64,000 nt of DNA from positions 62,001 to 126,000 of the IMG/VR virus record IMGVR_UViG_3300036770_008729; one strand, written 5' to 3'. The translations under genes and the position numbers were made by a program. Positions within the stretch are counted from its first letter, which is position 1. Each line of letters starts with the position of its first letter. The notes below the pieces were generated by a model that saw only the letters and a list, made by a program, of their open reading frames with translations, was not told the origin of the DNA and ran no database searches. Shown piece after piece: positions 3,741-54,794 of the stretch.

Positions 3741-4265
3741 ATGAATAAATGGAAATTTATAAAAGCACTCAACTCACCACTTAAACCATTTAAGTTAAAA
3801 TTTTACTTTGGTAAAATAAGTGTAGGTGTGCCTTATTTCTTCCCACGTAGAACCGTAAAAGATCCTGGTAAACCCGGATACCTTAAATTTGTAGATAAAA
3901 AATTTGGCATTGATGTAGTTTCACTTGGATGGAAAACTAAATGGAGTAGTACTGATTATCGATTAGAATGGGAGCCAAGAATATCATTTGTTTTTTTTAA
4001 GTGGCAATTTGTTATCTTCTTCAATGCACCAGAGTCAGAACACTATTGGCCGATTTGGCTTTACTATCATAATGATACCGATAAGACTAAATCGATTAAA
4101 GAAAGAATCGAACAATGTCAACAGGAATATCCCCAGATATGGGAAAGATCTCAAAATGGAAAAAAAGAGACCATAAATTATTATGACTATGTCTTAAAAG
4201 ATAAATGGAAAAAGAAACCACTTGATGAGGTTAGAGATAAAAAATTAGATAAGATATTAAAATAA
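3741..4265 (+). CDS. aromatic-rich hypothetical protein with C-terminal RDKKLDKIL tail
   Basis: Start reassigned to ATG 3741 (MNKWKF) behind promoter motif. Confidence 0.75.
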   Translation: MNKWKFIKALNSPLKPFKLKFYFGKISVGVPYFFPRRTVKDPGKPGYLKFVDKKFGIDVVSLGWKTKWSSTDYRLEWEPRISFVFFKWQFVIFFNAPESEHYWPIWLYYHNDTDKTKSIKERIEQCQQEYPQIWERSQNGKKETINYYDYVLKDKWKKKPLDEVRDKKLDKILK

Positions 4266-4269
4266 GTTA

Positions 4270-7200
4270 TCAATTTATTTTGTTAACAATTTTGTTTATA
4301 ACCTTAATATATTCTAAATCTATAATCTTTATTAGGTAAATTCCAGTCTTAGATTCTCCTAAATCTTGTTTTATTTTAGTAATACCTTGACTAACACTTT
4401 GCTTTTTTTGACTTATAAGTTTACCACTAATATCATAAACTTCTATCATAAGCTGTGTTTGATTTTTAGTAATATATTCTACAACAAACTCATTTTGTGT
4501 TGGATTAGGATATACTTTTGCATCCACTTCATCTAATTTAATTTGTGAAGTCTTAACAATCAAACTATCATTATTAGGATTTGCTTGTCTTTGTGTTATA
4601 CAACCAGCTTGTATTACTAAAGTTCTCCAAGTACTAGTTCCACAATTAGTTACTGATCGAACTGATAAAGTTCCTCCATTGAATCCCGATGAGAATGTAA
4701 CATCGATTATTCTACTAATGGAAGAACCAGTAGTTCCATTTGGTAACATCCATTGATAACTTGTTGCGCCATTTACTGCTACAATACTGTAAGTGGATGT
4801 TGCTCCTATGTTACCACATGTTGGTCCTGAGATTGCTCCGGGCACTGGTGGTGTTTTACTTATTGATAATGTTCTTGCTGTACTTCTAACACCACAAGCG
4901 TTTTGTGCTTGAACTTGTATAGTACCTCCAGTAAATTGTGGACTAAACTGTACTAATACATTTCTAGTACCTTGACCTTGAACTATTGTGGCGTTGGATG
5001 GTGCTGTCCAAAAATATGAAGTCGCTCCTGATACTGTACTGCTTGAATACAATACATTACTTGATGTTTGATCTACATTAGTATAAGCAGAACAAACATT
5101 TGTTGTACCTGTAATTCTAGTTGGTGTTGCAGGTGCATTAGTACCCGAACTTGTGACAGTTAAGGTACTTGGTGATCCAGTACCACAACTATTGATTGAT
5201 GCCACTGTTATGTTCCCACTTACAAATGAACTTGTAATAGTGACTTGGATAGTATTAGTACCTTGACCATTGTTTAATGTAATACCATTTGGTACTGTCC
5301 AAGAATAACCAATAGTGGCGTCATACATTGGTGATATTGAGTATGAAGTAGTTGTAGCACAAGTACTTGTTGGACCACTAATCGGACCTGGTATTCCAGG
5401 TAAAGAGTTGATTGTGATAGTAGATGAAGCTGATGATATACAATTGCCTGTTGATGCAGTGTATGTCATTGTACTTGTATTTTTAGCATAAACTGTATTT
5501 CTAATATCACCAGTATAAGATTGTGTTGCTGTTGGATTTATATATAATCCAGTTAATGGTGACCAGGTTACCATTGTTGGAGCATATATACCAAACTTCA
5601 TGTTTGGACGATACTTACTACTTATAAGATTGTTTGCTTCATTAAGTGGTTCACAAACTGAAAAGTCATTATCATAACCTCCATAAACTGAGTTAAATGA
5701 AGTTTGACTAAACTCTACTGCTGAGTTTGTACCAGTACAGTTGCTACAAGAATTGTTTACATCATTGTCGTGACAGATCTCTATTACAATATTGTAAAGT
5801 GGATTCCATGTAAATGATTGATTAAAAGAATATACTTTCCATCCAACTGTAGGTGCTTGTTCTTGTCCAGTAGTGTAAACAGTTACAAAAGGACCTACGG
5901 TAACACTTAAAAGACTACCACTTTCTGTAATATAACCATAAGATAAGTTGTCATTTATGGTGTGAGCTATTTTAATTGTAAAGTTATTTTGGTAACCAGT
6001 ACCTTGTGATAGTACTTTTAATGCTAATGAATTTATATCACCAGCAACTAAACCAAGTGCAAGTAATTCTGATGATCTAATTAGATATTGCACTCTTGAA
6101 CCTTCATAGCTACTTGTATAAGGTGTAATACCTGATTGACCAGTAAGAGTTGTATTGACTCCTAATTGACGACTGAATGTAGCTGATCCTCCTGTTGCTG
6201 TTAATGTTGTAATTGAATTACTACAAGCAGTTGTTATTGAAGGTGTAACTGATAAAGCAGATGGTGTTGGGTTTATTTGTATGTCTACAGATGAAGAAGA
6301 ACTACAACCATCTAAAGTCGATGTTAAAGTATATGTTCCTTCATTATTGTATGTAGCGTTATTAATAGTTGGTGACTGTTGTGATGATGTATAGTTATTT
6401 GGTCCAACCCAACTAAATGTATTACCAATATCAGAACTTCCAATTAAACTTATAGTTGAATTTTGACATACAGAACTATTGTTTGTACTAGCATCTGTTA
6501 AAGGTATAGCTTTTATAGTCACACTAACTGGTATATTTGATGAACCACATTCTGAGGTAATAGTTAGTGAGTAGTTACCAGCATCAGCATTTGTAGTATT
6601 GTCAATTAAGAGTGATGGTGTTTCAGCACTTGGATTGATTGATGGATCAATTACTATACTATTTTTATACCATTGGTATTGCACTTGACTACCAGTTGCT
6701 ACAACTGTTAAATCTATTGGATCATTAAAACAAACAGATGATATTGTTGATGGTTGTGAAACAATTTGTAAAGTAGGTATTCCAGTTATATTAATAACAT
6801 CACTAACACTACAACTTCTGTAAGTTGAAGTTAAAGTATAACTATTTAATCCTACTAAAGCAGATGGTATAGTTGCATTTAAAGTACTTGCTGAAAAACT
6901 AGGACCTGTCCAACTGATTGTTGGTGCTACTGTATTTAAAGTAATGGTAATGCTCCAGTCATTAAATGTACCTATATCACCAGTATAGTCATCAGTAATA
7001 CGAAGTGTCCAAACACCATCAGCACTTCCAGTTAAGTTAGAAAAAGGTTGCTCAGGTGTGTATGTTCCTGTGAATGGAGCTGTACCTGATGTTATAGCGG
7101 TACCTGAAGTAGAGAATACTGTGTTAACATAGTTGTCACCAGTACTTCCATTATCACTTGATAAATCTATTGAAGAACCATTTGGAGCAATTAAAGTTAA

Positions 7201-8763
7201 ATCTAAGTCCGCATCAAATGGATGTGTTATGTTTAGTAATACTGAGGTTATTTGATTAGCATTAGCACCAGTTCCACTAACAGTAATAGTTCTGTCTATA
7301 CTTGAAACATCAGGTATTAATAATGAGGATGTATTTGAACCACTAAATGATGGATTCATATTTGGTGAAACTCCATCTAAGTTGATTTCACTACTCTGAC
7401 AAATACTAAAGTCTGTTCCGGCTTCAGCAGTTGGATAAACATTGTTTATGTTGACAGCTACATCATATACAATATTACCAGGACCAGCTCCATTTGTATT
7501 AGTACTAAATTCAAACTGCGATTCTTTAATAACATCAAACGATAAACTATTACTACCAGTTGTTGTAGGAGCAGTTACTGAAAAAGTATATGTGGTAGTT
7601 GATCCAGCAGCTAAGTTGTTAGCATCTATTTTTTGATAACTTGCTTGGTCATTCCATTTAACACCTATATTATAGTCATCTCCACCTCCATCAATCCAAG
7701 AAACAGTACCAGTATTTTTAACAGTTACAGTTATCTGACGAGTTTCTCCTGCACACCACCAAGAGTTGCCTGTATTAGAACTTATCCAAGTTGCAAGATA
7801 TGGTGTAGGTGGAGGTGTCCAAGTATAAGTTAATCCTGAGGCTGGTTTAACTGTGTTTGATAATCTTACAGTAGCACTATTAGTCCCACCTGCTGTAGTA
7901 CTTGACCAACTAGTTGTAGTTGTACGATTTGCAAAATCAGCATTAGAATTTCCTCTTAATCCAATTTCAAAACCAACTGCTGTAGTGTTTGTAGGTCCAA
8001 GTATGCTGTAGACAAAATCTATCGTATTTGTTGTCTCGTTTAATCTAATTTGAAAATCATACAATTCACCAAAACCACCATTTGTAGTATATCTTTGAAA
8101 TCCAGTCCATTGAACTACTAATGTTTGATTTGGAGCAGTTCCAATTGTTTCATAACGAATACCAAATTTTGGATTTGAAAATCTGAAATGAAAACCAGTA
8201 CCTTTTGAAGTTGCTGCGGATGATATTGTAACTGTGTTTGTTCCTATAGCAGTTACAGTTGCATTGTTTGGTATACCAGATCCTGATACCTTATCACCGA
8301 TAGATATTTGACTAATATCACCACTTGTTATTGTGATTGTAGTACTACCACTTGTTCTATTTGCTAAAAAAGAACCTCTACCAATTAAGTCTCCTCCCAT
8401 AGCAGATATTACGTTGTTGGAGGTTCCCAAAGATAATGGGGACATACTGTTTATTGGTAAAGTACCTAATGAAATCCAACCATTAGTACTGATACCAAAC
8501 TGAGTGTAGATTGTATTGTTATAAACAAAATTAAACCCAATTGGTAGTAACGCTGATGAGACGTTATCGTCTAAAAATCCTGCTGTAGTATTTGGTAATG
8601 TTCCAGTATATACACTGTTTGTCCAATTAGTAAAGTTGTTGTAATTGGTTCCTCCTGTAATTTCAGTATATGTTCCTGATGAGGATGAAAAGGTATAATT
8701 ATTTACTTGTGATAATAAGTTGAATGAAATTAGAGTAAGAAGAAGGGTTAGTAATTTTTTCAT
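4270..8763 (-). CDS. large secreted multidomain protein with T9SS type A C-terminal sorting domain (P-proprotein-like, Ig-like and PKD-like repeats)
   Basis: Signal peptide MKKLLTLLLTLISFNLLSQ (ATG 8763); P-domain (LNITHPFDADLDLTLIAPNG...GVWTLRITDD); PKD-like repeats (YSWTVPNG...GQGTNTI); CTD VYPNPTQ...IEVYDISGKLI...GIYLIKI. Confidence 0.85.
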   Translation of the reverse strand: MKKLLTLLLTLISFNLLSQVNNYTFSSSSGTYTEITGGTNYNNFTNWTNSVYTGTLPNTTAGFLDDNVSSALLPIGFNFVYNNTIYTQFGISTNGWISLGTLPINSMSPLSLGTSNNVISAMGGDLIGRGSFLANRTSGSTTITITSGDISQISIGDKVSGSGIPNNATVTAIGTNTVTISSAATSKGTGFHFRFSNPKFGIRYETIGTAPNQTLVVQWTGFQRYTTNGGFGELYDFQIRLNETTNTIDFVYSILGPTNTTAVGFEIGLRGNSNADFANRTTTTSWSSTTAGGTNSATVRLSNTVKPASGLTYTWTPPPTPYLATWISSNTGNSWWCAGETRQITVTVKNTGTVSWIDGGGDDYNIGVKWNDQASYQKIDANNLAAGSTTTYTFSVTAPTTTGSNSLSFDVIKESQFEFSTNTNGAGPGNIVYDVAVNINNVYPTAEAGTDFSICQSSEINLDGVSPNMNPSFSGSNTSSLLIPDVSSIDRTITVSGTGANANQITSVLLNITHPFDADLDLTLIAPNGSSIDLSSDNGSTGDNYVNTVFSTSGTAITSGTAPFTGTYTPEQPFSNLTGSADGVWTLRITDDYTGDIGTFNDWSITITLNTVAPTISWTGPSFSASTLNATIPSALVGLNSYTLTSTYRSCSVSDVINITGIPTLQIVSQPSTISSVCFNDPIDLTVVATGSQVQYQWYKNSIVIDPSINPSAETPSLLIDNTTNADAGNYSLTITSECGSSNIPVSVTIKAIPLTDASTNNSSVCQNSTISLIGSSDIGNTFSWVGPNNYTSSQQSPTINNATYNNEGTYTLTSTLDGCSSSSSVDIQINPTPSALSVTPSITTACSNSITTLTATGGSATFSRQLGVNTTLTGQSGITPYTSSYEGSRVQYLIRSSELLALGLVAGDINSLALKVLSQGTGYQNNFTIKIAHTINDNLSYGYITESGSLLSVTVGPFVTVYTTGQEQAPTVGWKVYSFNQSFTWNPLYNIVIEICHDNDVNNSCSNCTGTNSAVEFSQTSFNSVYGGYDNDFSVCEPLNEANNLISSKYRPNMKFGIYAPTMVTWSPLTGLYINPTATQSYTGDIRNTVYAKNTSTMTYTASTGNCISSASSTITINSLPGIPGPISGPTSTCATTTSYSISPMYDATIGYSWTVPNGITLNNGQGTNTIQVTITSSFVSGNITVASINSCGTGSPSTLTVTSSGTNAPATPTRITGTTNVCSAYTNVDQTSSNVLYSSSTVSGATSYFWTAPSNATIVQGQGTRNVLVQFSPQFTGGTIQVQAQNACGVRSTARTLSISKTPPVPGAISGPTCGNIGATSTYSIVAVNGATSYQWMLPNGTTGSSISRIIDVTFSSGFNGGTLSVRSVTNCGTSTWRTLVIQAGCITQRQANPNNDSLIVKTSQIKLDEVDAKVYPNPTQNEFVVEYITKNQTQLMIEVYDISGKLISQKKQSVSQGITKIKQDLGESKTGIYLIKIIDLEYIKVINKIVNKIN

Positions 8764-8982
8764 GGTCAATAATTACTTTTAGTATATATTCAATAAATGT
8801 AAAAATTGATGAATGAAAAAGAAAGAATCGAAATTTATACAAATTGTCTACAGAATTTCTACAAATAATTTTACTCCGATATTTGTTATTATCATCCTGG
8901 TAGATTTATCACTCTGGATAAATTAAGAAGTGATAAGTTAAATATGTTGGGGATTTAATTTGGTCTCCAATAGATTTTTCAC

Positions 8983-8990
8983 TATTTTTG
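8983..8990 (+). promoter_or_regulatory. TAnnTTTG (TATTTTTG) element 4 nt before ATG 8995
   Basis: Consensus match with conserved spacing. Confidence 0.6.
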
Positions 8991-8994
8991 TATT

Positions 8995-9142
8995 ATGACT
9001 CTAAATGAATTAGAAAAAATAGCAGACTTTTATATGATGGATTTAGAATCTATCATTGATGATATTGATGGTGCAGTAGGCTTTTGAGGAAAAACCTAAA
9101 TCAGAAATAAGAAATGATAAATTAGAAGAATTGGGAATATGA
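8995..9142 (+). pseudogene. small gene split by a +1 frameshift at TTT-TGA (mutation, assembly error or programmed shift)
   Basis: MTLNELEKIADFYMMDLESIIDDIDGAVGF stops at 9085-9087; +1 frame continues EEKPKSEIRNDKLEELGI and ends in an ATGA overlap with the next gene. Confidence 0.55.
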
Positions 9143-9420
9143 TGACAATAGACGAATTAAAATCTTTAAGAAAAGGAGAATTGGTTGTTTTCACTAAGAT
9201 AGATGAAAAGATTACTGAATATCATAATCACCAAGTAGGTGATGAAATGATTTTTATAGAAATTGAAGACGCATATAAGATTGGATCAAGTGGTAGAGAT
9301 GTTGTTAATTTTCTAAGAAACTCATACACAATCTCACACTTCTCTTATGAGATATGCCATTATATAGAAAGAAAATCTAAACTAGAAAGAGATAGAAAAA
9401 TAAAAGACTTAGGACTATGA
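9139..9420 (+). CDS. hypothetical protein (SH3/KOW-like start) with RDRKIKDL tail
   Basis: LRKGELVVF start; ATGA overlaps on both sides. Confidence 0.7.
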   Translation: MMTIDELKSLRKGELVVFTKIDEKITEYHNHQVGDEMIFIEIEDAYKIGSSGRDVVNFLRNSYTISHFSYEICHYIERKSKLERDRKIKDLGL

Positions 9421-9818
9421 AATTTTACTATGATAATAATATAGGATATGAATGCTCCTGGAAAAATAATCTGAAAGGTGGTTATAATTCTTGGTCCAAT
9501 ATGGAATTTGCTAAAATTAAAGTAAGAATACCTATTAGTCTATACAGAAAGATTCTATTTGACTTAAAAGAATATGATGGTGACGATCCTACTTTAGAAT
9601 TTAAGATTTATAAATTTAAAAATGAGGAAGTAGATTGGGGAACTTATTCAACAAACGATGCTGAACTTTGGAAATACATTGCTATCATAGAAAGAATATC
9701 TTATTCATCGGAATTTAATGATAATACTGTTATGGCTCAAATTGAATGTTTAATTCAATATAATGATAAGTGTAATAAGTCAGAGTTAAGAGATGTGATT
9801 TTAAGTGAGTTGATATGA
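9417..9818 (+). CDS. hypothetical protein with RDVILSEL tail
   Basis: 133 aa ORF, coupled to neighbours. Confidence 0.7.
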   Translation: MKFYYDNNIGYECSWKNNLKGGYNSWSNMEFAKIKVRIPISLYRKILFDLKEYDGDDPTLEFKIYKFKNEEVDWGTYSTNDAELWKYIAIIERISYSSEFNDNTVMAQIECLIQYNDKCNKSELRDVILSELI

Positions 9819-10039
9819 ATTTACCAGATAGTATTCCACATAGTATAGATTGTCCTTGTGGACAAATTGCTAATTTAGAATGGCAGTATCCAAGTGCTCT
9901 TCATAAATATCTATCTTATTATTGTAAGGATTGTAAAAATTCATTCACAACAACTTCATCTGATGAGGTATCAATGTGTATTTTCAATTCTAAGAAAAGA
10001 AGTCTTAAACGAAAAAATAAAATTAAAAAAATTATATGA
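9815..10039 (+). CDS. zinc-ribbon-like protein with RKNKIKKII tail
   Basis: CPCG...CKDC cysteine pairs. Confidence 0.65.
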   Translation: MNLPDSIPHSIDCPCGQIANLEWQYPSALHKYLSYYCKDCKNSFTTTSSDEVSMCIFNSKKRSLKRKNKIKKII

Positions 10040-14895: not shown

Positions 14896-14917
14896 AATCT
14901 TTTTATTATATCAAATT

Positions 14918-15232
14918 TTATGCCAATATTTTATTTAATTTTGACTCTCTATATATTTGTTTGACTGTATCTGTGAGTTTGATAAAAACCCATTTATTAT
15001 ATCTAATCTTAAAATCATCATTCATTACTAATGCCTGCATAATAGGAAGTTCATCTACTAGTTCTTTGAATATTTTATTTGCATCTTCTAACTTCCATTC
15101 AGCCATCTCACTCAATCTTTTGCAAAAATGATTCATAAATGGAGTTGCTGTATCAATTACAGTTTTAAGATATTTATCATTTCTATAGGTATCTGGTGCC
15201 CATTCACTTATTTCAACATACCAGGTAATCAC
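14918..15232 (-). CDS. hypothetical protein with RESKLNKIL tail
   Basis: 104 aa ORF in grpE-dnaJ run. Confidence 0.7.
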   Translation of the reverse strand: MITWYVEISEWAPDTYRNDKYLKTVIDTATPFMNHFCKRLSEMAEWKLEDANKIFKELVDELPIMQALVMNDDFKIRYNKWVFIKLTDTVKQIYRESKLNKILA

Positions 15233-15732
15233 TTTACTATCTTAGTAATTTTTTTATCTCTTATTTCTTCCAATATATTTTGAGATTCTATACATTTTCT
15301 AATTGATTTAGCAACATAGTTATCTACAATTAGTGTTAGAGTTTCAAGAGTTCTATCTAACTCATCGAAATGAAATAATGATGTTTTAACCTTTGGTATC
15401 ATAATCAATAGGTAATCTATGAATTCATCAATATCAAAAGATAATCGATATAATTCTTTTTGATAATCTGTTAATATCTCTGGAGTTTCAATGAAAAACT
15501 TTGCCCAAACTCTTCTAATAGAAGGTAAAATTAAATCTAAAAAATCATCATCACTTTCATAGAATGAACCCTGGAATATATCATCTTCGAATAGATGCAG
15601 TTTCTTATCTAAGACATAGTTTAATATATTCTTTAGTGATTCGGAGTTTCTTACACCTGAACAAACTGAATCTATAACAATTAATCTATATTGTTCATCA
15701 TCTCTGATGGCGAAGATGTTAGCGTGTTTCAT
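15229..15732 (-). CDS. hypothetical protein with RDKKITKIV tail
   Basis: 167 aa ORF, coupled to neighbours. Confidence 0.7.
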   Translation of the reverse strand: MKHANIFAIRDDEQYRLIVIDSVCSGVRNSESLKNILNYVLDKKLHLFEDDIFQGSFYESDDDFLDLILPSIRRVWAKFFIETPEILTDYQKELYRLSFDIDEFIDYLLIMIPKVKTSLFHFDELDRTLETLTLIVDNYVAKSIRKCIESQNILEEIRDKKITKIVK

Positions 15733-17548: not shown

Positions 17549-17965
17549 ATGATAAACGAAACAAAAATCAAACGCATACAGGATAAAATTAAGTTAGCAA
17601 TCTCCAAAATTGAACAAGAAGAAAATGTTAAAATTGATTTTAATTCTGTTAGATTTAATGTTGCTCAATACACAACTCAAATGTCGGTTAAAACATTAGA
17701 TAAGACTGAAAAGGTTGATAATGTCTTTAAAGCTATGTGTTCAAGGCTTGGTTTTACTCAAAATATTATTGGAATGAAATTTGACGGACCAAATGGTATT
17801 TACGAAATTATAGATATACAAACTAAAAATAGAAAGTATCCAGTAATTGCTGTTGCACCAAGTGGAACAAGGTATAAATACTCAGTTGCTCATATCAAAA
17901 AACTTATCGGTGGTGATAAGATTATAAATAGAAACGCAAATTTAGACAAACTAATAGATGGATAA
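17549..17965 (+). CDS. hypothetical protein with RNANLDKLI tail
   Basis: 138 aa ORF heading the adk-ligase run. Confidence 0.7.
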   Translation: MINETKIKRIQDKIKLAISKIEQEENVKIDFNSVRFNVAQYTTQMSVKTLDKTEKVDNVFKAMCSRLGFTQNIIGMKFDGPNGIYEIIDIQTKNRKYPVIAVAPSGTRYKYSVAHIKKLIGGDKIINRNANLDKLIDG

Positions 17966-28422: not shown

Positions 28423-28439
28423 AAAATAGACCCAATTTT

Positions 28440-29702: not shown

Positions 29703-29703
29703 A

Positions 29704-31232: not shown

Positions 31233-32159
31233 ATGGGTAATATAGGTTATTGTTGCATAAACCTTTCAATAAATGAAGGTAGAAAAAAGAAAGACCACAT
31301 CTCTGTTAATAGAGGTATGACTAAAAAAACATTTGAGACAAAAGGTCTTTCTTATGTCTCTGAACTAGCTATACAAAATATTAATGACTTACAAAAGATA
31401 TTAGAATGGAATGTTAAGAATAAGATATTTGTTTATAGAATGTCTAGTGATATGTTTCCATGTATAGGATTTTATAAACTAGAAAACCTTCCTCGTTTCG
31501 CAGCAATTTCTCAAAAATTGAAAGCAATTGGTGATTACGCTAAAATTAATTCTATCCGACTTTCTTTTCACCCAACTCATTTCTGTATTCCCGCTAGTGA
31601 GAATCCAATAGTTGTAACAAATGCAATTGATGAATTAGATAAACATGCTCAAATAATGGATATTATGGGTTTAGAACAAACACACTTCTATCCTATAAAC
31701 ATACATGTAAATACTACTAAACCGACCAGAGAAGAAGCAGCTGATAGATTTTGCAAACAGTTTTGGAATTTAAGCGAGTCTTGTAGAAAGAGATTAGTAG
31801 TAGAAAATGATGATGGTCCTAACCAGTATTCTACAAAGATGTTATATGATTTAATTTATACAAAAATTGGAGTTCCCATAACTCATGACTTTCATCACCA
31901 TAACTATGGACCACAAGATATTTCACAGGAAGAAGCACTTAAACTTGCCCATTCTACTTGGAATGGCATTAAACCAATGACTCATATGAGTTCTCCAAAA
32001 ACATTAGAAGATAATTCAGGAAAACAAACAGCACATGCAGATTACATATATGAAGAAATTAAAACTTATGGTCTTGACTTTGATACAGAAATTGAGGCAA
32101 AAGCCAAAGACCTTGCGGTATTCAGATACAGAAAACAATTTCAGATACTCAAAGGGTGA
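31233..32159 (+). CDS. uvsE: UV-damage endonuclease (UvsE/UVDE)
   Basis: IGYCCIN, YRMSSDMFP, RLSFHP, LVVENDD, DFHHH, AHADY, EIEAKAKD. Confidence 0.92.
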   Translation: MGNIGYCCINLSINEGRKKKDHISVNRGMTKKTFETKGLSYVSELAIQNINDLQKILEWNVKNKIFVYRMSSDMFPCIGFYKLENLPRFAAISQKLKAIGDYAKINSIRLSFHPTHFCIPASENPIVVTNAIDELDKHAQIMDIMGLEQTHFYPINIHVNTTKPTREEAADRFCKQFWNLSESCRKRLVVENDDGPNQYSTKMLYDLIYTKIGVPITHDFHHHNYGPQDISQEEALKLAHSTWNGIKPMTHMSSPKTLEDNSGKQTAHADYIYEEIKTYGLDFDTEIEAKAKDLAVFRYRKQFQILKG

Positions 32160-32457
32160 TCGCTTTATCACTAATGATGGTATCGGTTATGTTAAATTTG
32201 AAGTTGGTGAGAAAGTCATAGTTGATGAAATTATCTATGGTGAAGAAAAAGTAGGAGTTGTTATCGATATAAATGCACGATATGTAGTTCCTGAGATTGA
32301 GCAGAGTTGGAAGGTAGAATACTTAGTTATATTCAATCTAAAGACAGGTGATAATATCTACATACAGCCTACTAAAAAATGGCTTACTGATGTGGATTTA
32401 AGAAAATGGTCATTGGATGAAGAAAGAGAATGGAAATTAAATAATATACTATCATAA
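32035..32457 (+). CDS. hypothetical KOW/SH3-like protein with REWKLNNIL tail (start uncertain)
   Basis: FEVGEKVIV; annotated start overlaps uvsE extensively. Confidence 0.55.
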   Translation: MQITYMKKLKLMVLTLIQKLRQKPKTLRYSDTENNFRYSKGDRFITNDGIGYVKFEVGEKVIVDEIIYGEEKVGVVIDINARYVVPEIEQSWKVEYLVIFNLKTGDNIYIQPTKKWLTDVDLRKWSLDEEREWKLNNILS

Positions 32458-32735: not shown

Positions 32736-33293
32736 ATGCAAATTAAAATACATATCGTACATTGTCAAGATTCTGATACACTTAGAATCATTCAAGACCA
32801 TGAATTAAAGAAAAACAAAACTCCTAAATTAAATGATGGATACATTTTAGTAAGGGAATGGTTTGATGATGATAGTTATGATTATAGAGAAGTTCCAGTT
32901 ACAATTGAACAAACCTTTTTAGTTATTACTAAAGGTGAGTTCATAAGAAATGATAAGAATTCATCAAAGTTAAATGCCTACTATATGTCTGGGGGTTTTG
33001 CCGAAGTCAATAGATTGGCTTATTCTTATTCTGTTAATGTTATTCTATGTGACGGAAATTGGACTTTATATGAAAATGACTTAGTTTATTCTAAGTCTGG
33101 AATAAAGGCAACTACAGGTAGTATGTATTCATATCATTTGAATGAGCCTGAGCAAATGTATATTGAGGATCTATTAGACTATGAAGTTTGGCAAAGTTTA
33201 AATCTTACAGATATTCTAAAATCCTATTTGACTCAATCCGAAATAAGAGATAGTAAAATTGATAAAATATTAGATAATGAGAGTGATACATAA
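32736..33293 (+). CDS. hypothetical protein with RDSKIDKIL tail
   Basis: 185 aa. Confidence 0.7.
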   Translation: MQIKIHIVHCQDSDTLRIIQDHELKKNKTPKLNDGYILVREWFDDDSYDYREVPVTIEQTFLVITKGEFIRNDKNSSKLNAYYMSGGFAEVNRLAYSYSVNVILCDGNWTLYENDLVYSKSGIKATTGSMYSYHLNEPEQMYIEDLLDYEVWQSLNLTDILKSYLTQSEIRDSKIDKILDNESDT

Positions 33294-33516
33294 ATCTAAT
33301 TTTGAAGACAGACCATATGTCTTAAAGACATCATTAATGTTTGTTGAGGATAATAAAATATGTGATGGGTGTGATAGACACGGAGTAAGATGTGCCTCAA
33401 TAAAACTCCTAAAAGGAGATGTTTCAATTCTTTGCCAAGATTGTATTGAGGGAATTTTAGATAGCTTAGACCCAGCTATAGTTAGAGATATTAAAATAGA
33501 TAAGATATTGGAATGA
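33277..33516 (+). CDS. zinc-finger protein with RDIKIDKIL tail
   Basis: CDGC...CQDC. Confidence 0.7.
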   Translation: MRVIHKSNFEDRPYVLKTSLMFVEDNKICDGCDRHGVRCASIKLLKGDVSILCQDCIEGILDSLDPAIVRDIKIDKILE

Positions 33517-33734
33517 ATGTAATTTGTATAAATAAAGGAAAGATAAAAAATCTCACAGAAGGTCGAAGATATCAAATAGTTAAAAAAAATAGTGGATTTC
33601 ACTTTGGATCTGATATTCCTTACTCCAATATGTGGATAATTAATGATGCTGGAATTGAAAAACACTATTCATCTAAAAGATTTTTAACAATCTCCGAATT
33701 CAGAAATATCAAAATAGATTCTATATTAAAATGA
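33513..33734 (+). CDS. small SH3-like protein with RNIKIDSIL tail
   Basis: VICI...LTEGRRY...NDAG...YSSKRF; paralog of next gene. Confidence 0.7.
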   Translation: MNVICINKGKIKNLTEGRRYQIVKKNSGFHFGSDIPYSNMWIINDAGIEKHYSSKRFLTISEFRNIKIDSILK

Positions 33735-33937
33735 TAGTTATTTGTACAGATGTGGACAATGTAGGTTCTGATATGAAATTATCACTTACAATAGGGAAAT
33801 CATATAAGGTCATTAGAGAAAATAATATAGGATTTTATTTAGAAGATGACCGTGGTTCTATTCAATGGTATTCTAAATGGAGGTTCAGTAGGTCAGAGTG
33901 GAGAGATAATCAAATAGATAAAATATTATTTACTTAG
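33731..33937 (+). CDS. small SH3-like protein with RDNQIDKIL tail
   Basis: VICT...LTIGKSY...DDRG...YSKWRF. Confidence 0.7.
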   Translation: MIVICTDVDNVGSDMKLSLTIGKSYKVIRENNIGFYLEDDRGSIQWYSKWRFSRSEWRDNQIDKILFT

Positions 33938-35967: not shown

Positions 35968-36441
35968 TTATTTTTGTTCTTGTATTTTTTTAATGTAAGT
36001 TAATTCTTCTTTAATAAAATCGAAATGTTTATCAATAAGAAAGTTTAAATCTAAATCTTTAATTTCTAATCTCTTTAAGAGTAATTTAAATTCTTTATCA
36101 GAGACTTTTGGTTTTTCACCAGTTTCACCTTTTGACCAGAACCAACTTGGATAAGGTTTATCTAACATGAAATTATACCAAAGATTTAAGGATGTTACTT
36201 TATCTATTGTTTTAAGATTCAAAAGTTGTGCTTTATCAGGATATTTTTTTGAGAAATTCCTATTAATAATAAAAAACCATTTTTCTTTTTGCTCATCTGT
36301 TACATATTGCCAGTCTGTTTTGTTTCTAAACATAGCATTTGTTATAGCAAGTAAATTATCTTCTATTTGTCTCATACAGTTTTTGTATCTGATTATCTCT
36401 AAATTGTTGTAAATCGTAAACTTTTGCAAAATCTTCACCAA
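35968..36441 (-). CDS. hypothetical protein, weakly reminiscent of T4 gp62 clamp-loader subunit
   Basis: FFIINRNFS..YP..AQLLN...WFWSK pattern; near RNase H. Confidence 0.4.
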   Translation of the reverse strand: MVKILQKFTIYNNLEIIRYKNCMRQIEDNLLAITNAMFRNKTDWQYVTDEQKEKWFFIINRNFSKKYPDKAQLLNLKTIDKVTSLNLWYNFMLDKPYPSWFWSKGETGEKPKVSDKEFKLLLKRLEIKDLDLNFLIDKHFDFIKEELTYIKKIQEQK

Positions 36442-36703
36442 ATATACTAACTAAATCTGAATAACTTTCTAAATTCTTTGACTCATTCATAAGTATCTTA
36501 CATATTCTACTCAATGATTCACCCAATCCATCATAGTCAGGTTTTCTGTATTCCCACCATTCACAATATTTACTAAGTATCTCTGTTAAATTATCATCTG
36601 TATATTCATTCCATAATCTAAATAAATCCATAGTAGGTTTCCACTTTATTAAAATCCAGTTGACATCAAAAATAAGATGACTACTTAATTCAACGTCTGT
36701 CAT
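36356..36703 (-). CDS. hypothetical protein with RDNQIQKL tail
   Basis: 115 aa, coupled to RNase H stop. Confidence 0.6.
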   Translation of the reverse strand: MTDVELSSHLIFDVNWILIKWKPTMDLFRLWNEYTDDNLTEILSKYCEWWEYRKPDYDGLGESLSRICKILMNESKNLESYSDLVSIFGEDFAKVYDLQQFRDNQIQKLYETNRR

Positions 36704-37722: not shown

Positions 37723-38625
37723 ATGTTGTTAACTAATTATATTAATGTCTTAATGAATAGAGGTAATATAGGATATTATAATAGGGTTATGTCCAATAAA
37801 TATAAAATAGGTGATTCTGTTGATATACCCATTGAATTATTATCAAAGAGTTCATACCTTAAAGTTAAGGTATCATGTGATATTTGTAAAGATGAGTCAT
37901 ATACAACATATAGAAATTATAATGATTGTTTAGGATACGGATTTTATTCTTGTCAGAAATGTAAACATATTAAAAGAAAGCTAACAAATAACGATAAGTA
38001 TGGCAAAGAAAACTATCAAAACGTTGATAAAATAAAAAAAACAATGATTAGTAAGTATGGTTTTTACAACAACAATAGAGAAAAATCTAAAAAAACCTGT
38101 ATACATAAGTATGGTGTGGATAATGTGTCAAAAGTAGAATTAGTTAAGTTAGCAAAGATTGATACAAATATCAAAAATTAGGGAGTTGATAATGTTTTTC
38201 AGTCAGAAGATATAAAACTTAAATCAAAAAAAACTATGGTTAGTAAATTTGGGGTTGAACATCCTAATCAAAATATCAACTTATTTAAAAAATCACAAAT
38301 ATCCGGATACAAAATGTGTATTTATAATGGGTTATACTATAGAGGTAAAAATGAGTTAAATTTTATAAAGTACTGTGAAGATAAATCATTGGTTATTAAA
38401 AATGGACCATCTATAAGATTTACTATGGAAGGTAAATCTAAAGTTTATCATTCTGATTTTTTTATTGAGTCGGCTAATTTGATATGTGAGATAAAGTCTA
38501 AATATACATATGAGTATAATGAAAAAATTAATATAATTAAAAGAGATGAGTGTATTAAGCAAGGATATGCATTTATATTCATAATAGATATGGATTATTC
38601 CGAATTTGACAAAATTACCCAATAA
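37723..38625 (+). pseudogene. putative homing endonuclease (Zn ribbons, KYGVxN repeats, C-terminal PD-(D/E)XK) interrupted by an in-frame TAG at 38179-38181
   Basis: Two track ORFs are in one frame; CDIC..CQKC; KYGKEN/KYGVDN/KN*GVDN/KFGVEH repeats; YHSDF...EIKS. Confidence 0.7.
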
Positions 38626-39010
38626 GTTTCTTTATATTTTGATCTCTGTTCAATTTTAATTCTTTAGAAGAAGTATCAACAATTAGATCTAAATTTTTAC
38701 ACAAAATCTTATTTTTAGTTTGTTGAAGTATCTCGCTATATTTTATAGCAAAATCAACGTCATTTACTCTGAATTCTTCAAACTCATCTTTAGTAAGTAA
38801 TACAAGTCCGGTTTGTGGACAAACTGCAAAGTGTAAATTATAATTTGTAATAAGATTTGGTCTATTTGAAGAATTACCGGTATCTATATCAAGTGCGTAA
38901 TAAGTGTGTTTTTTTGGCTCTGACCAAATGTCAATTACAATTGAATTGATTTTATTTTCAATAATACTATCTATGAAATTAGATAGTTTGACTTTCATTT
39001 GCTCTGTCAT
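38615..39010 (-). CDS. hypothetical protein with RDQNIKKLI tail
   Basis: 131 aa. Confidence 0.65.
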   Translation of the reverse strand: MTEQMKVKLSNFIDSIIENKINSIVIDIWSEPKKHTYYALDIDTGNSSNRPNLITNYNLHFAVCPQTGLVLLTKDEFEEFRVNDVDFAIKYSEILQQTKNKILCKNLDLIVDTSSKELKLNRDQNIKKLIG

Positions 39011-39299
39011 CTAAAACAGAATTAATTTTTTTATCTCTTTCTAAGATTCTGAATTTCTTTTGAAGAATTGATTCAATTTTTTCAGTAAAAACAAATCCAT
39101 TTTTAATTAACTCTTCATAAAAAGGCTTTCCTAAAACATTTATTAATGCTAAATTTTGTGCTAAAAAAGGATCTCTACCTGAATCAATTTCTACTTCTTC
39201 GCCAAAGATATTATATTTTGTTACGTTGTAATTGTAATTTGGAGTTATTTGGGCTGTTGTATTCCAAGTTCTTGTTAGGTTTGAAATAATCTTTGACAT
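38979..39299 (-). CDS. hypothetical protein with RDKKINSVL near C-terminus
   Basis: Likely ATG at 39299. Confidence 0.6.
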   Translation of the reverse strand: MSKIISNLTRTWNTTAQITPNYNYNVTKYNIFGEEVEIDSGRDPFLAQNLALINVLGKPFYEELIKNGFVFTEKIESILQKKFRILERDKKINSVLDDRANESQTI

Positions 39300-39328
39300 A
39301 CTTTTATAATCCAAAAGTTTGACTTTGT

Positions 39329-40900: not shown

Positions 40901-41425
40901 TTACAAAATCTTTGAAATTTGTATATCTCGATAAAGACTATTAAAAGATTCTCTTATCTCTTCATCATATGGATAGAATGATATATTTGCGTAGTAATCA
41001 TAGTATTCTTGATTGACCAACTTTTTATACTTATCATAAACTCCTTTCACTAAGTCAAAGCAATTTTCTTTCTCAGTCCATTTAACCATATTTCGAATTA
41101 AGTCAAAATCAATATCTTTAAATCCATAGAAGAAATGTTTATTTGCCCAGTTATGAATATAATTTTCTACGACTTTTTTATTAAAGTTATCAATGGATTT
41201 AGGACTTGCCATAAGTGGTGTTGTAAAGTAAAACTCAACATCCATTTTCATAATCTTCTTCGTTAATTTTAAGACAGCCTTATGACATTTACCATCTAAC
41301 ATAACATAATATATACCATCAATAATTGTGCATACTGGAATAAGATTGATTTTCTTAAAGAAAAGAAAATCACCTCTTATAATCCAATTAGAAGAATTAT
41401 CTGGTATGATGTTATTTAACTCCAT
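40901..41425 (-). CDS. hypothetical protein with RDIQISKIL tail
   Basis: 174 aa. Confidence 0.7.
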   Translation of the reverse strand: MELNNIIPDNSSNWIIRGDFLFFKKINLIPVCTIIDGIYYVMLDGKCHKAVLKLTKKIMKMDVEFYFTTPLMASPKSIDNFNKKVVENYIHNWANKHFFYGFKDIDFDLIRNMVKWTEKENCFDLVKGVYDKYKKLVNQEYYDYYANISFYPYDEEIRESFNSLYRDIQISKIL

Positions 41426-41735: not shown

Positions 41736-41763
41736 AATAATGGACAAATATAAGGATAAAATC

Positions 41764-44640: not shown

Positions 44641-44643
44641 GAG

Positions 44644-45186: not shown

Positions 45187-45190
45187 AGTT

Positions 45191-46341: not shown

Positions 46342-46343
46342 TA

Positions 46344-46793
46344 ATGAAACACCTAAAAAAATATAGATTATTTGAATCACAGAAGTATAATATGGGTGAT
46401 TTTATGGATATCATTTATGATTTGCGTCTTAGGTGTTATGACTTTAACGATGGTGGTTGCACTTGGAAAATTCTACCGGAAGAAGAAATACAAATCAACT
46501 TACTTAGACTTGCCTATAATAGAACTATTGAGTCTAAAGGCGTTGTATTTAAGTTATTAATTGATATACGAAATATAAAATCAGATGATGATCTTAATTC
46601 TCAATCTCTACCTAATTGGTTTATCAATAAATGTCTAGAAATAGAATCAATGATGAGAATGTATGGATTTAAAACTCTACCTTCTATCAAAAGACCAACT
46701 GACTGGGAACATTTTGACACAATTGACGAACTAAGTGAGGCAAGTGGTCTTTTTAGAGAAGTTCAACTTCTTTTCAGAAAAATTGGAGAGTAG
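46344..46793 (+). CDS. CTS-like protein
   Basis: MKHLKKYRLFES; FMDIIYDL. Confidence 0.8.
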   Translation: MKHLKKYRLFESQKYNMGDFMDIIYDLRLRCYDFNDGGCTWKILPEEEIQINLLRLAYNRTIESKGVVFKLLIDIRNIKSDDDLNSQSLPNWFINKCLEIESMMRMYGFKTLPSIKRPTDWEHFDTIDELSEASGLFREVQLLFRKIGE

Positions 46794-50938: not shown

Positions 50939-50947
50939 TTAAAAATT

Positions 50948-53141: not shown

Positions 53142-53156
53142 TAGACATAATTCATT

Positions 53157-53184: not shown

Positions 53185-53209
53185 ATTTTATATCCTTATA
53201 TTTGTCATA

Positions 53210-53626: not shown

Positions 53627-53628
53627 TT

Positions 53629-53796: not shown

Positions 53797-53826
53797 TTTC
53801 ATCTTGTGAATTTTAATATATAACTT

Positions 53827-54393
53827 ATGAAACATCTAAAAAACTATAAGTTATTTGAAAATTTAAATACACCTATCAGTATAGAACAATTCTTATCTGA
53901 AATCAATTTCCCTCAAGAATTAAGAACACAAGTAATAAACTGGTGGAATTTAAACAGAGGTGAATTTATAATTCATTGTTTTAATTTCTCATCACCTCAA
54001 CCAATAGCTGGTGTTTTTCTTGGTGTAGATGAAATTGCTATCAATAAAAGATTACCAATGCCACCTCATATTAAATTATTTTTAGCTCTTCATGAATCTG
54101 GACATTGTAATCAACACAGAGAAGGAAGATTTATGACTGGTTATTATGACACCGTAATTGCTGGTAACAAACCAGCCTTTTTACAAGCCTATATGGATCT
54201 TGAAAAAGAAGCTAATGACTATGCTTTTAATTCATTAAGAGAGATGGGATTAGAAAGATTGTATCAATTTGAGGAATCTAGATTAAGAGGAAATCAAAGA
54301 GCAGGTGAAATGGTTTGGTCAATGATGACTGCTGATATAGCGAGATTCAATCCTAATGATTTTATTGACCTTTTGAAAAAACAAATACTTTAA
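53827..54393 (+). CDS. HExxH zinc metallopeptidase-like protein with CTS-like N-terminus
   Basis: MKHLKNYKLFEN; ALHESGHCNQH; EKEANDYA; AATATATA (53815-53822) 4 nt upstream. Confidence 0.75.
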   Translation: MKHLKNYKLFENLNTPISIEQFLSEINFPQELRTQVINWWNLNRGEFIIHCFNFSSPQPIAGVFLGVDEIAINKRLPMPPHIKLFLALHESGHCNQHREGRFMTGYYDTVIAGNKPAFLQAYMDLEKEANDYAFNSLREMGLERLYQFEESRLRGNQRAGEMVWSMMTADIARFNPNDFIDLLKKQIL

Positions 54394-54428
54394 TACAAAG
54401 TATAATATATCAAAATAATTTAGTATAT

Positions 54429-54794
54429 TTGTATCCTGAAAGAATAATTTATCTCCATCCGTGGGAAGAAGTTTTCAAGTTTTCAAAGTATGATACTCAT
54501 ACAATGATTAGCTTTGTCACTTTAATTGCTAAAGACACTAAAGACGACTATTACTATTTCTACGATGATATAGATAAATTAGGTGACATTTCACGAATGC
54601 CTCTTTATATCAAAGAAGATTGGTTAAACTATAACAAAAAAGAATTAAACATCTCTGTATTAAATGTTTGTATAAAAGAGTGTAAAGATTTATTAGATAA
54701 CCCACCAACGATTGAAGATGAGCATGTATATCAACAACAATTCAATCTGCTAAACTCAATTAGAAGAGATTTAATCATAAAAGGAATAACATGA
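54429..54794 (+). CDS. hypothetical protein with RRDLIIKGI tail (start uncertain)
   Basis: Track start TTG lies inside a TATATTTG motif. Confidence 0.55.
   Translation: MYPERIIYLHPWEEVFKFSKYDTHTMISFVTLIAKDTKDDYYYFYDDIDKLGDISRMPLYIKEDWLNYNKKELNISVLNVCIKECKDLLDNPPTIEDEHVYQQQFNLLNSIRRDLIIKGIT

What the first reader, a model, noticed from the sequence alone, without database searches (positions are those of the whole stretch)
3741..54794. About 17 small proteins end in the same R-(D/N/E)-x-K-(I/L)-x-x-(I/L) tail
Seen at or near C-termini: RDKKLDKIL (4265), RNDKLEEL (9142), RDRKIKDL (9420), RDVILSEL (9818), RKNKIKKII (10039), RESKLNKIL (14918), RDKKITKIV (15229), RNANLDKLI (17965), REWKLNNIL (32457), RDSKIDKIL (33293), RDIKIDKIL (33516), RNIKIDSIL (33734), RDNQIDKIL (33937), RDNQIQKL (36356), RDQNIKKLI (38615), RDKKINSVL (38979), RDIQISKIL (40901). 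The bodies are unrelated (zinc ribbons, SH3-like barrels, helical domains), and none of these proteins carries the N-terminal CTS-like tag. Inference: a portable amphipathic helix acting as a docking tag for one hub (phage or host), an oligomerisation helix, or a degron. I do not recognise a described function.
Basis: partly seen in the sequence, partly recalled or inferred. Interest (0 to 1): 0.8.

Follow-up and report, generated by a model that had tools for sequence, protein, structure and literature searches.

The report
Shared C-terminal tag on early phage proteins
About one in six proteins of a group of giant (~0.6 Mb) phages of Bacteroidota, all small, early-type and of unknown function, end in the same short helix (…R-D-x-K-I-x-x-I-L), which looks like an undescribed address or recognition tag read by one common partner.

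Summary
In the window, 16 intact genes and 2 decayed ones end in R-[DEN]-x-K-[IL]-x-x-[IL]-[LG]: 12 strict-pattern hits at C-termini against 0.12 expected. The related complete 635-kb phage LR745206 has 126-174 such genes out of 990, against 1.6-6.8 expected.

The constraint acts on the protein, not the DNA:
- Synonymous codons vary freely.
- The tail is better conserved than the body in orthologues.
- The bodies are unrelated, and none of 30 has a Pfam domain.
- One widespread family carries the extra 17-residue linker and tail only in these phages.

The tail is predicted to be helical. Tail genes sit behind host-type TAnnTTTG promoter boxes. They never carry the N-terminal T4-CTS-like tag, whose genes sit behind a phage-specific TTAATATAT motif.

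A more distant 636-kb relative, LR756504, uses a shifted consensus (R-K-x-K/I-I-x-x-L-L-stop) on 46 unrelated bodies. That is the pattern expected if one reader co-evolves with the tag. Other giant or Bacteroidota phages sampled lack the tail.

Best reading: a portable recognition tag on early proteins that docks them to one partner, for recruitment or for timed removal. The partner and the outcome are unknown. I found no published description.

The parts
3741..4265 (+). Tail-bearing gene (174 aa from the ATG at 3741; the ORF is open from 3606). Tail ...PLDEVRDKKLDKILK*, R codon at 4233.
   Evidence: A TAnnTTTG box lies 9 nt before the ATG. Homologues in other phages end about 17 aa earlier, without the tail.
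8806..8958 (+). Decayed tail gene. ORF 8806-8868 stops at an in-frame TAA; the same frame continues to ...LDKLRSDKLNMLGI* (8920-8958).
8995..9142 (+). Decayed tail gene. ORF 8995-9087 (30 aa), then the tail ...KSEIRNDKLEELGI* in the +1 frame (R codon at 9110). The break lies at or just after the T run at 9082-9085.
   Evidence: An intact, longer orthologue is at L027 12637-12861. No indel variant at depth 44 in the source run.
9139..9420 (+). Tail-bearing gene, 93 aa, ...LERDRKIKDLGL* (LG-type tail).
   Evidence: The stretch 9143-9420 is missing in one related population (X6), with both neighbouring ORFs left intact.
9417..9818 (+). Tail-bearing gene, 133 aa, ...KSELRDVILSELI* (I at position 3).
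   Evidence: Its tail-bearing orthologue in LR745206 shows 50% tail identity against 32% body identity.
9815..10039 (+). Tail-bearing gene, 74 aa, with Cys pairs (CPCG...CKDC), ...LKRKNKIKKII* (K at position 1).
14918..15232 (-). Tail-bearing gene, 104 aa, ...KQIYRESKLNKILA*. It lies between the DnaJ and GrpE genes.
   Evidence: tail 80% identical, body 59%.
15229..15732 (-). Tail-bearing gene, 167 aa, ...LEEIRDKKITKIVK*.
   Evidence: The Atlas search gave only weak leads.
17549..17965 (+). Tail-bearing gene, 138 aa, ...IINRNANLDKLIDG*.
   Evidence: tail 90% identical, body 61%. TATATTTG lies 4 nt before the ATG.
32035..32457 (+). Tail-bearing gene (start uncertain; it overlaps 31233-32159), ...LDEEREWKLNNILS*.
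32736..33293 (+). Tail-bearing gene, 185 aa, ...QSEIRDSKIDKILDNESDT* (6-residue acidic extension).
   Evidence: A weak PHROG match covers only the tail region.
33277..33516 (+). Tail-bearing gene, 79 aa, with two CxxC pairs, ...AIVRDIKIDKILE*.
33513..33734 (+). Tail-bearing gene, 73 aa, ...ISEFRNIKIDSILK*.
33731..33937 (+). Tail-bearing gene, 68 aa, with a weak DUF6501-like body whose profile ends before the tail, ...SEWRDNQIDKILFT*.
   Evidence: Orthologues keep the tail with class-conserving changes.
36356..36703 (-). Tail-bearing gene, 115 aa, ...QQFRDNQIQKLYETNRR*.
38615..39010 (-). Tail-bearing gene, 131 aa, ...LKLNRDQNIKKLIG*.
38979..39314 (-). Tail-bearing gene, 111 aa, ...ILERDKKINSVLDDRANESQTI*.
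   Evidence: In the AlphaFold model the tail is part of a long C-terminal helix, residues 78-109.
40901..41425 (-). Tail-bearing gene, 174 aa, ...NSLYRDIQISKIL*. It lies two genes from the topoisomerase II large subunit gene (41764-43611).
   Evidence: Orthologues from 100% down to 27% identity keep the tail. AlphaFold pLDDT 92.5, tail is helix 164-173. No PDB fold match.
54429..54794 (+). Weak variant tail ...NSIRRDLIIKGIT*. The called TTG start lies inside a TAnnTTTG box, so the true start is probably downstream.
   Evidence: In its orthologue family 16 of 19 members score as tails.

Best explanation
The tail is a portable C-terminal module of about 12-17 residues: a short polar linker followed by a 2.5-3-turn helix, [K]-[S/Q]-[E]-Phi-R-[D/E/N]-x-K-[I/L]-x-x-[I/L]-[L/G]-(0-2 residues)-stop. 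During evolution it has been appended to more than 100 unrelated small, soluble proteins of unknown function in one group of ~0.6-Mb Bacteroidota phages.

I propose that it is an address or recognition tag for the early protein class. The helix presents a stripe made of I/L residues with the invariant Arg at its centre. That stripe docks into a groove on one common reader protein, phage- or host-encoded, and so brings all tagged proteins to one place or machine. The most likely outcome is recruitment or sorting. The second most likely is hand-over to an AAA+ protease for timed clearance of early proteins.

Shown here: the tag exists, it is selected at the protein level, it is portable and helical, it is restricted to this phage group, it is tied to host-type promoter boxes, it excludes the N-terminal CTS-like tag, and its consensus shifts by lineage.

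Inferred: that there is a single reader, the docking geometry, and what docking leads to.
For: 1. It is not chance and not base composition. AT-rich phages outside the group have none.
2. Selection acts on the protein. Synonymous codon use at tail positions matches the genome. Adjacent tails are no more alike in DNA than random pairs. In all 6 orthologue pairs the tail is more conserved than the body, and families keep the tail down to 27% identity.
3. It is portable. Bodies fall into 136 clusters from 143 proteins. A family with more than 387 members carries the linker and tail only in this phage group, and whether a genome uses tails at all goes with it: 0 of 88 genes against 6 of 34.
4. It is helical in two models with different bodies.
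5. A common reader is suggested. In LR756504 the consensus shifts on 46 unrelated bodies: position 1 D/E/N to K (p = 2e-17), position 4 to I, position 7 to L, and the stop comes directly after L8 (p = 5e-16).
6. It marks a distinct class. Runs of genes that include tail genes have the Bacteroidota -7 box TAnnTTTG upstream in 35% of cases against 14% for other runs (p = 2e-4). Runs with CTS-like N-tag genes have TTAATATAT in 54% against 10% (weaker replicate). There is no overlap between the two tags.
7. Tail proteins have no known domains: 0 of 30 with a Pfam hit, against 8-10 of 30 size-matched controls.
8. Seventeen strong copies are internal or N-terminal, and P0004 has one at each end. So recognition does not need the free carboxyl end.
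Against: - No reader has been identified, and nothing here shows binding.
- The early class is inferred from promoter-like boxes only. No expression data were used, and only about a third of tail-gene runs have the exact box.
- The lineage shift could partly reflect shared ancestry or mutational drift rather than co-evolution with a reader.
- Absence in other phages rests on samples of 50-150 kb.
- In the 174-aa family the tail has high pLDDT and could pack on its own body. Contacts could not be inspected.
- A tag on 13-18% of all proteins is unusually frequent for a docking motif.
Confidence: 0.45

Rival explanations
1. Degron. The tail marks early proteins for timed destruction by an AAA+ protease. 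The candidate is the phage's own PrkA/YeaG-type enzyme (window 26500-28422, with DUF444 and SpoVR neighbours), or host ClpXP, Lon or FtsH.
For: - The tail is near the C-terminus and found on early-type genes.
- Close PrkA copies (66-86% identity) occur in all three tail-positive complete genomes, LR745206, LR756502 and LR756504. They were not found in tail-less LR756501, Lak, MA9V-2 or PTm5.
- PrkA is an ATP-dependent Lon-like protease in vitro (PMC9512850). YeaG is required for broad starvation-induced proteolysis of cytoplasmic proteins (PMC13684143).
Against: - PrkA is also in Ralstonia phage RsoM2USA, where a 50-kb sample next to it has no tails.
- The co-occurrence is confounded by relatedness.
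- From general knowledge, known C-degrons are usually unstructured and need the extreme C-terminus. This tail is a conserved helix, tolerates up to 12 extra residues, and occurs internally.
- YeaG-dependent proteolysis is described as largely nonspecific (PMC13684143).
Confidence: 0.22
2. Self-association helix. The tails pair with each other in short coiled coils, so that tagged proteins form homo- or hetero-oligomers or a common assembly without a separate reader.
For: - The spacing of R, I/L and I/L fits d-a-d positions of a heptad.
- An unrelated protein (P0005) repeats ADRDSKIEELGAEV about ten times, as in a coiled coil.
- In one model the tail is the end of a 32-residue helix.
- A lineage-wide consensus shift is also expected if tails must match each other.
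Against: - By general coiled-coil knowledge, ten residues are too short for a stable coiled coil on their own.
- Indiscriminate mixing of more than 100 different proteins seems costly.
- The upstream residues are not conserved as heptads.
- The 174-aa family shows a helix-break-helix, not one long helix.
Confidence: 0.13
3. Chaperone handle. The tail recruits the phage-encoded DnaK-DnaJ-GrpE system to newly evolved, poorly folding proteins.
For: The window encodes DnaK (20408-22273), DnaJ (13819-14895) and a GrpE-like protein (15729-16205). Two tail genes sit between DnaJ and GrpE, and this arrangement is conserved in L083.
Against: - Phage DnaK also occurs in tail-less LR756501 (150 kb sampled) and in Lak phages.
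- From general knowledge, DnaK prefers extended runs of 4-5 hydrophobic residues without acidic residues. That does not fit a helix with conserved D/E/N and polar positions 5 and 6.
Confidence: 0.07
4. By-product of gene-cassette turnover. The tail-coding ends plus the ATGA stop/start overlaps are recombination joints, and the peptide has little function of its own.
For: - A related population lacks exactly one tail gene (9143-9420). The junction lies inside the repeated ...GGxxTATGA after two LG-type tails, and both flanking ORFs stay intact.
- Other populations diverge upstream of 9142.
- Tail genes more often overlap the next gene by ATGA: 24% against 13%.
- Tail genes cluster together.
Against: - Synonymous sites are free.
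- Adjacent tails are no more alike in DNA than random pairs: 0.60 against 0.59 overall, and 0.45 against 0.48 at third codon positions.
- The tail is more conserved than the body in orthologues.
- Tails are also present where the next gene is convergent, for example at 4265 and 33937.
Confidence: 0.06

Closest known systems
T4 capsid targeting sequence (CTS) of internal proteins
   Same: A short terminal peptide shared by otherwise unrelated phage proteins, which addresses them to one destination. These phages also have a CTS-like tag, MK[YH]LKxYKxFE, on at least 41 proteins.
   Different: The CTS is N-terminal, is cleaved by the prohead protease, and sits on late head proteins (from general knowledge). 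The tail is C-terminal, sits on early-type genes, and never occurs on the same protein as the CTS-like tag.
Encapsulin cargo-loading peptides
   Same: Short conserved C-terminal peptides, behind a flexible linker, on unrelated cargo proteins. They dock into a pocket of one partner, an HK97-fold shell.
   Different: The sequence is different (Gly/Ser/Leu-rich, extended rather than helical; from general knowledge). They serve a few cargoes per system, not more than 100. No evidence here that tail proteins are encapsidated.
C-terminal translocation signals of type IV secretion effectors (e.g. Dot/Icm)
   Same: Tens to hundreds of unrelated proteins in one genome share a short C-terminal signal read by one machine.
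   Different: Those signals are loose compositional biases rather than a sharp motif with an invariant Arg (from general knowledge). No secretion machine is implicated here.
Adaptor- or protease-read degradation tags (ssrA/SspB, ClpX C-motifs, MuA RRKKAI)
   Same: Short C-terminal tags that give a common fate to unrelated proteins.
   Different: No sequence match. The tail tolerates 0-12 further residues and occurs internally. It is genome-encoded on more than 100 genes rather than added or rare.
MinD/FtsA-type membrane targeting helices
   Same: A short helix near the C-terminus containing basic and aliphatic residues.
   Different: The tail has a conserved acidic or polar position 1, Arg in the middle of the apolar stripe, and a hydrophobic moment below background. 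Tail proteins are not enriched in membrane features.

Membership tests
T4-type capsid targeting sequence | N-terminal position, with a (L/I)-x-E protease site after about 10 residues | tested here: not met
   The tail is C-terminal in 128 of 145 strong copies. The CTS-like tag is a separate motif on other proteins, with no overlap.
T4-type capsid targeting sequence | Carried by late, virion-packaged proteins | tested here: inconclusive
   Tail-gene runs carry host-type TAnnTTTG boxes rather than the TTAATATAT motif seen before N-tag genes. This is promoter inference only; there are no proteomics data.
ClpX/ssrA-type C-terminal degron | Recognition element at the extreme C-terminus with a free carboxylate (LAA-COOH or RRKKAI-COOH type) | tested here: not met
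   0-12 residues follow the motif, and 17 strong copies are internal or N-terminal. No sequence resemblance.
ClpX/ssrA-type C-terminal degron | Shortens the half-life of the tagged protein | not testable with these tools
   Needs stability assays.
Membrane targeting amphipathic helix (MinD/FtsA type) | High helical hydrophobic moment, with a basic polar face and no conserved acidic residue | tested here: not met
   Mean moment 0.234 against 0.289 for random windows of the same proteins. Position 1 is D/E/N in 82% of tails found with the looser pattern.
PIP-box / clamp-binding motif | Q-x-x-[ILM]-x-x-[FY]-[FY] or QL[SD]LF | tested here: not met
   Logo: no Q at the anchor position and no aromatic pair. 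Positions 7 and 8 are I/L/V and L/G/I.
Type IX secretion C-terminal domain | C-terminal beta-sandwich domain of 70-100 aa, plus an N-terminal signal peptide | tested here: not met
   The tail is 12-17 aa. Pfam finds Por_Secre_tail and CHU_C only in other window proteins, 4270-8769 and 55360-58977. Tail proteins have no Pfam hit, and their N-termini show no signal peptide by eye.
HeH/SAP DNA-binding motif | Two helices joined by an extended linker, about 35 aa | tested here: not met
   Only one short helix, then the stop. No Pfam SAP or HeH hit.
One fast-evolving paralogue family | Bodies detectably related or of one fold | tested here: not met
   143 bodies fall into 136 BLASTP clusters. Lengths range from 56 to 731 aa. 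Two AlphaFold models have different architectures. The same body exists with and without the tail. Profile-level or fold-level comparison of all bodies was not done.

The most novel reading that the evidence does not exclude
The largest known phages run a two-tag addressing system for their own proteome. The N-terminal CTS-like tag sends late proteins to the head. The C-terminal R-D-x-K-I-x-x-I-L tag is read by a dedicated receptor that co-evolves with it, and sends more than 100 early proteins of unknown function to another common destination, such as a phage-built compartment or machine, or a programmed clearance route. That would be a sorting system of a kind not described for any bacterial virus.
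Probability: 0.3. Interest if true: 0.9.

Novelty: new variant of a known kind. Interest (0 to 1): 0.8.

Why it matters
Most genes of giant phages have no known function. A single tag that marks 13-18% of them as one functional class gives a handle on that unknown fraction. It predicts one reader protein that can be looked for. It splits the proteome into at least two addressed classes, early tail proteins and late CTS-like proteins. It also offers a ready-made peptide for pull-downs and reporter fusions.

The tail also works as a simple sequence marker for this phage group, and as a natural example of how a short motif spreads over unrelated genes.

Tried and rejected
- DNA motif (promoter, terminator or recombination site) translated in one frame: rejected. 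Synonymous codons follow genome usage, nothing is conserved downstream, and adjacent tails are not more alike in DNA.
- Composition artefact of an AT-rich genome: rejected by per-protein shuffles and by equally AT-rich phages without tails.
- One paralogous family: rejected.
- Translation coupling to the next gene: rejected as the cause, because tails also precede convergent genes. Tail genes do overlap the next gene by ATGA more often.
- Membrane-binding helix: rejected.
- Capsid targeting: unlikely, because a separate CTS-like tag exists and the two never co-occur.

Searches that gave nothing:
- Pfam and PHROGs on tail proteins.
- Foldseek against the PDB for the 174-aa family.
- Tail profile against PDB sequences.
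- ESM Atlas, scores below 0.75.
- Three literature searches.
- The tail profile against 1.84 billion proteins. It lacked power and gave only 3 hits at E <= 1e-3, so the global distribution could not be mapped that way.

I dropped it.

My first inference, that the tail is absent below about 62% topoisomerase identity, was too strong. LR756504 (45% identity) has a variant tail elsewhere in its genome.


Full report
WHERE THE WINDOW COMES FROM

The window is 30% G+C. It is identical to part of IMG/VR contig IMGVR_UViG_3300036770_008729, which is 281,114 bp long (locus L014). Its nearest complete relatives are the uncultured phages LR745206 (634,780 bp) and LR756502 (642,428 bp), at 75-78% DNA identity over parts of the query and 69-71% topoisomerase II identity.

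The window encodes proteins with type IX secretion sorting domains and SprB repeats, which points to a Bacteroidota host. The same DNA occurs in subsurface, freshwater and lagoon metagenomes from several studies.

THE OBSERVATION

Sixteen end intact ORFs.

The one ending at 9142 is the tail of a decayed gene. The 30-codon ORF 8995-9087 is followed by the tail in the +1 frame, and an intact, longer orthologue exists at L027 12637-12861. The source run shows no indel variant there at depth 44. A second remnant ends at 8958, behind an in-frame TAA.

Enrichment is very strong:
- Window: 12 C-terminal hits against 0.12 expected after shuffling each protein.
- LR745206: 126 of 990 called genes match R[DNE]x[KQNIA][IL]xx[ILV] within 13 residues of the stop, against 1.6 expected.
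- LR745206 with the looser pattern R...[IL]..[ILV][LIGCFM]: 174 genes against 6.8.

The logo is K/I/L, S/Q/E, E, I/L, R (invariant), D/E/N, x, K (79%), I/L, N/K/D, x, I/L/V, L/G/I, then 0-2 residues and the stop. There are two flavours...IL(x)* and ...LGI*.

PROTEIN-LEVEL OR DNA-LEVEL CONSTRAINT

The constraint is on the protein.
- Codon choice at R, D, E, N, K and I follows the genome-wide synonymous usage. The only deviation is a mild excess of A-ending codons at three I/L positions.
- Nothing is conserved downstream of the stop.
- Tails of adjacent genes are no more alike in DNA than random pairs: 0.60 against 0.59 overall, and 0.45 against 0.48 at third codon positions.
- In all six orthologue pairs between the window and LR745206, the tail is more conserved than the body.
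- The family of window gene 40901-41425 keeps the tail from 100% down to 27% identity.
- Close orthologues of 33731-33937 change D to E, I to L and L to I, but keep the pattern.

PORTABILITY

With tails trimmed, 143 tail proteins fall into 136 BLASTP clusters. Two AlphaFold models have different bodies: an alpha/beta fold with no PDB match, and a hairpin plus helices.

The clearest case is the family of window gene 3741-4265. It has more than 387 homologues. In most of them the protein ends at ...ILKxKY(L). Only members from this phage group carry an extra 17 residues, a linker plus the tail. Contigs that hold the tail-less form come from other, smaller phages (24-27% G+C) and have no tail among 88 genes. 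A contig with the tailed form, syntenic with the window, has 6 tails among 34 genes.

So tail use is a property of the genome, not of the protein family.

STRUCTURE

In both models the tail is helical: residues 164-173 at pLDDT of about 90 in one, and the end of a helix spanning 78-109 in the other.

On a helical wheel (my inference from the logo), I/L at positions 4 and 7 and L at position 8 form one stripe, and the invariant Arg lies in the middle of it. Consistent with that, the hydrophobic moment is lower than in random windows of the same proteins. This argues against a membrane-binding helix and for a specific protein contact.

Seventeen strong copies in LR745206 are internal or N-terminal, against 128 at the C-terminus. 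One metagenomic protein has a copy at each end. The free carboxyl end is therefore preferred but not required.

WHICH PROTEINS CARRY IT

- They are small, with a median of 108-113 aa.
- They are mostly soluble.
- They cluster along the genome: 36 adjacent pairs against 15.9 expected.
- They lack known domains: 0 of 30 have a Pfam hit, against 8-10 of 30 size-matched proteins without the tail.
- They never carry the N-terminal tag MK[YH]LKxYKxFE: 0 of 41 in LR745206, p = 0.007. From memory, that tag resembles the T4 capsid targeting sequence MKTYQEFIAE.

PROMOTER CLASSES

Gene runs that contain tail genes have the Bacteroidota -7 promoter box TAnnTTTG upstream in 22 of 62 cases, against 36 of 261 other runs (p = 2e-4). 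The reverse-complement control gives 13%.

Runs with N-tag genes instead have TTAATATAT in 14 of 26 cases, against 6 of 62 tail-gene runs.

The window shows the same split:
- TAnnTTTG lies 4-9 nt before the ATG at 3741, 8995 and 17549.
- TTAATATATA lies 5-8 nt before the ATG at 17511(-), 26182(-), 40870(-), 43714 and 53827.

A smaller set of related loci agrees in direction. I read this as tail genes being a host-polymerase (early) class, and N-tag genes a phage-promoter (late) class. This is inference from sequence only.

DISTRIBUTION AND LINEAGE SHIFT

Around the topoisomerase gene, loci with at least 64% identity to the window's topoisomerase have 1.4-5.9 tails per 10 kb, apart from a few loci at 65-72% identity with 0-0.8. 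Loci at 63% or less have almost none.

That does not mean absence in the more distant relatives. LR756504 (636 kb, 45% topoisomerase identity) has 66 tailed genes among 495 sampled, against 3.9 expected, on 46 unrelated bodies. Its consensus is different: R-K-x-K/I-I-E/N-E/D-L-L-stop.
- Position 1 changes from D/E/N to K (p = 2e-17).
- Position 4 becomes I in 94% of tails.
- Position 7 becomes L.
- The stop follows directly after L8 (p = 5e-16).
- The LGI flavour is missing.

A concerted change over dozens of unrelated proteins is what a shared reader co-evolving with its tag would produce.

No enrichment was found in samples of the following:
- LR756501 (735 kb; 150 kb sampled)
- Lak-A1
- Chryseobacterium phage MA9V-2
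- Tenacibaculum phage PTm5
- Ralstonia phage RsoM2USA

CANDIDATE READERS

- Phage DnaK also occurs in tail-less LR756501 and in Lak phages.
- PrkA at 66-86% identity is in all three tail-positive complete genomes, but a 57% copy is in tail-less RsoM2USA.
- PrkA/YeaG proteins are AAA+ Lon-like proteases linked to bulk cytoplasmic proteolysis (PMC9512850, PMC13684143). That keeps the degron reading alive, but it is not evidence for it.

CASSETTE DYNAMICS

One related population lacks exactly 9143-9420, which is one tail gene. The junction lies in the repeated ...GGxxTATGA that follows two LG-type tails, and both neighbouring ORFs stay intact. Two other populations diverge upstream of 9142. Tail genes overlap the next gene by ATGA more often than other genes, 24% against 13%.

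This shows how tail genes are gained and lost as units. It may also help the tail move to new bodies, but it does not explain why the peptide is conserved.

VERDICT

The finding is a real and very strong signal, and I found no description of it. It is a portable C-terminal helical tag on the early, function-unknown proteins of one group of giant Bacteroidota phages.

The best-supported mechanism is recognition by one common partner. My estimates:

| Reading | Confidence |
|---|---|
| Docking or sorting tag read by one partner | about 0.45 |
| Degron | about 0.2 |
| Self-association helix | about 0.13 |
| Chaperone handle | about 0.07 |
| By-product of cassette turnover | about 0.06 |

Noticed in passing
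window 43714-46793(+), 53827-54393(+), 33934-35094(-), 39329-40870(-), 17089-17511(-), 22430-23671(-), 25568-26182(-): At least 11 proteins start with MK[YH]LKxYKxFE or close variants, a tag resembling the T4 capsid targeting sequence with an L-x-E site. LR745206 has at least 41 of them. None also has the C-terminal tail.
   Followed up: partly
window, upstream of 43714, 53827, 40870(-), 17511(-), 26182(-), 23671(-): The motif TTAATATAT(A) lies 5-8 nt before the start codon of N-tag genes (about 25 nt before the start at 23671). It is probably a phage-specific (late) promoter. In LR745206 it precedes 54% of N-tag gene runs against 10% of tail-gene runs.
   Followed up: partly
window, upstream of 3741, 8995, 17549; also 41747(-) and 54429: The Bacteroidota -7 box TAnnTTTG ends only 4-9 nt before the ATG, which suggests leaderless or nearly leaderless early transcripts. 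At 41412-41747(-) and 54429-54794 the called TTG start is itself part of such a box, so the real start is probably further downstream.
   Followed up: partly
window 8806-9142: Two decayed tail genes lie side by side, one with an in-frame TAA at 8866-8868 and one frameshifted and shortened at about 9085. The frameshift shows no variant in the source run.
   Followed up: yes
window 9143-9420: Presence/absence polymorphism of exactly one tail gene in a related population (run X6). The junction lies in the repeated TATGA stop/start overlap. Populations X4 and X5 have different sequence upstream of 9142.
   Followed up: partly
window 13819-16205(-), 20408-22273(+), 26500-31200(+): The phage encodes a full DnaK, DnaJ and GrpE-like set, and a PrkA-DUF444-SpoVR triad. 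I assigned DnaJ, GrpE and DUF444 from N-terminal sequence, gene order and Pfam on the syntenic locus L083; DnaK, PrkA and SpoVR were confirmed by Pfam on the window itself.
   Followed up: partly
window 4270-8769(-), 55360-58977(+): Large phage-encoded proteins with PKD and SprB repeats and type IX secretion C-terminal sorting domains (Por_Secre_tail, CHU_C). They would be exported by the host's secretion system and mark the host as Bacteroidota.
   Followed up: no
window 33270-33665(-): A 131-codon ORF on the opposite strand overlaps three real tail genes. It is almost certainly spurious, and it displaced them in a greedy gene call.
   Followed up: no
P0005 (361 aa, from the 1.84-billion-protein library): An unrelated membrane-anchored protein with about ten tandem 14-residue repeats, ADRDSKIEELGAEV. 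Each repeat contains the LG-type tail core, which shows that the motif is compatible with a coiled-coil heptad with Arg at a core position.
   Followed up: no
P0004 (113 aa): A DUF6501-like small protein with the motif at both ends (QRNEKIDKLFDEN near the N-terminus, EWRNEKIDKLLDENN at the C-terminus).
   Followed up: no
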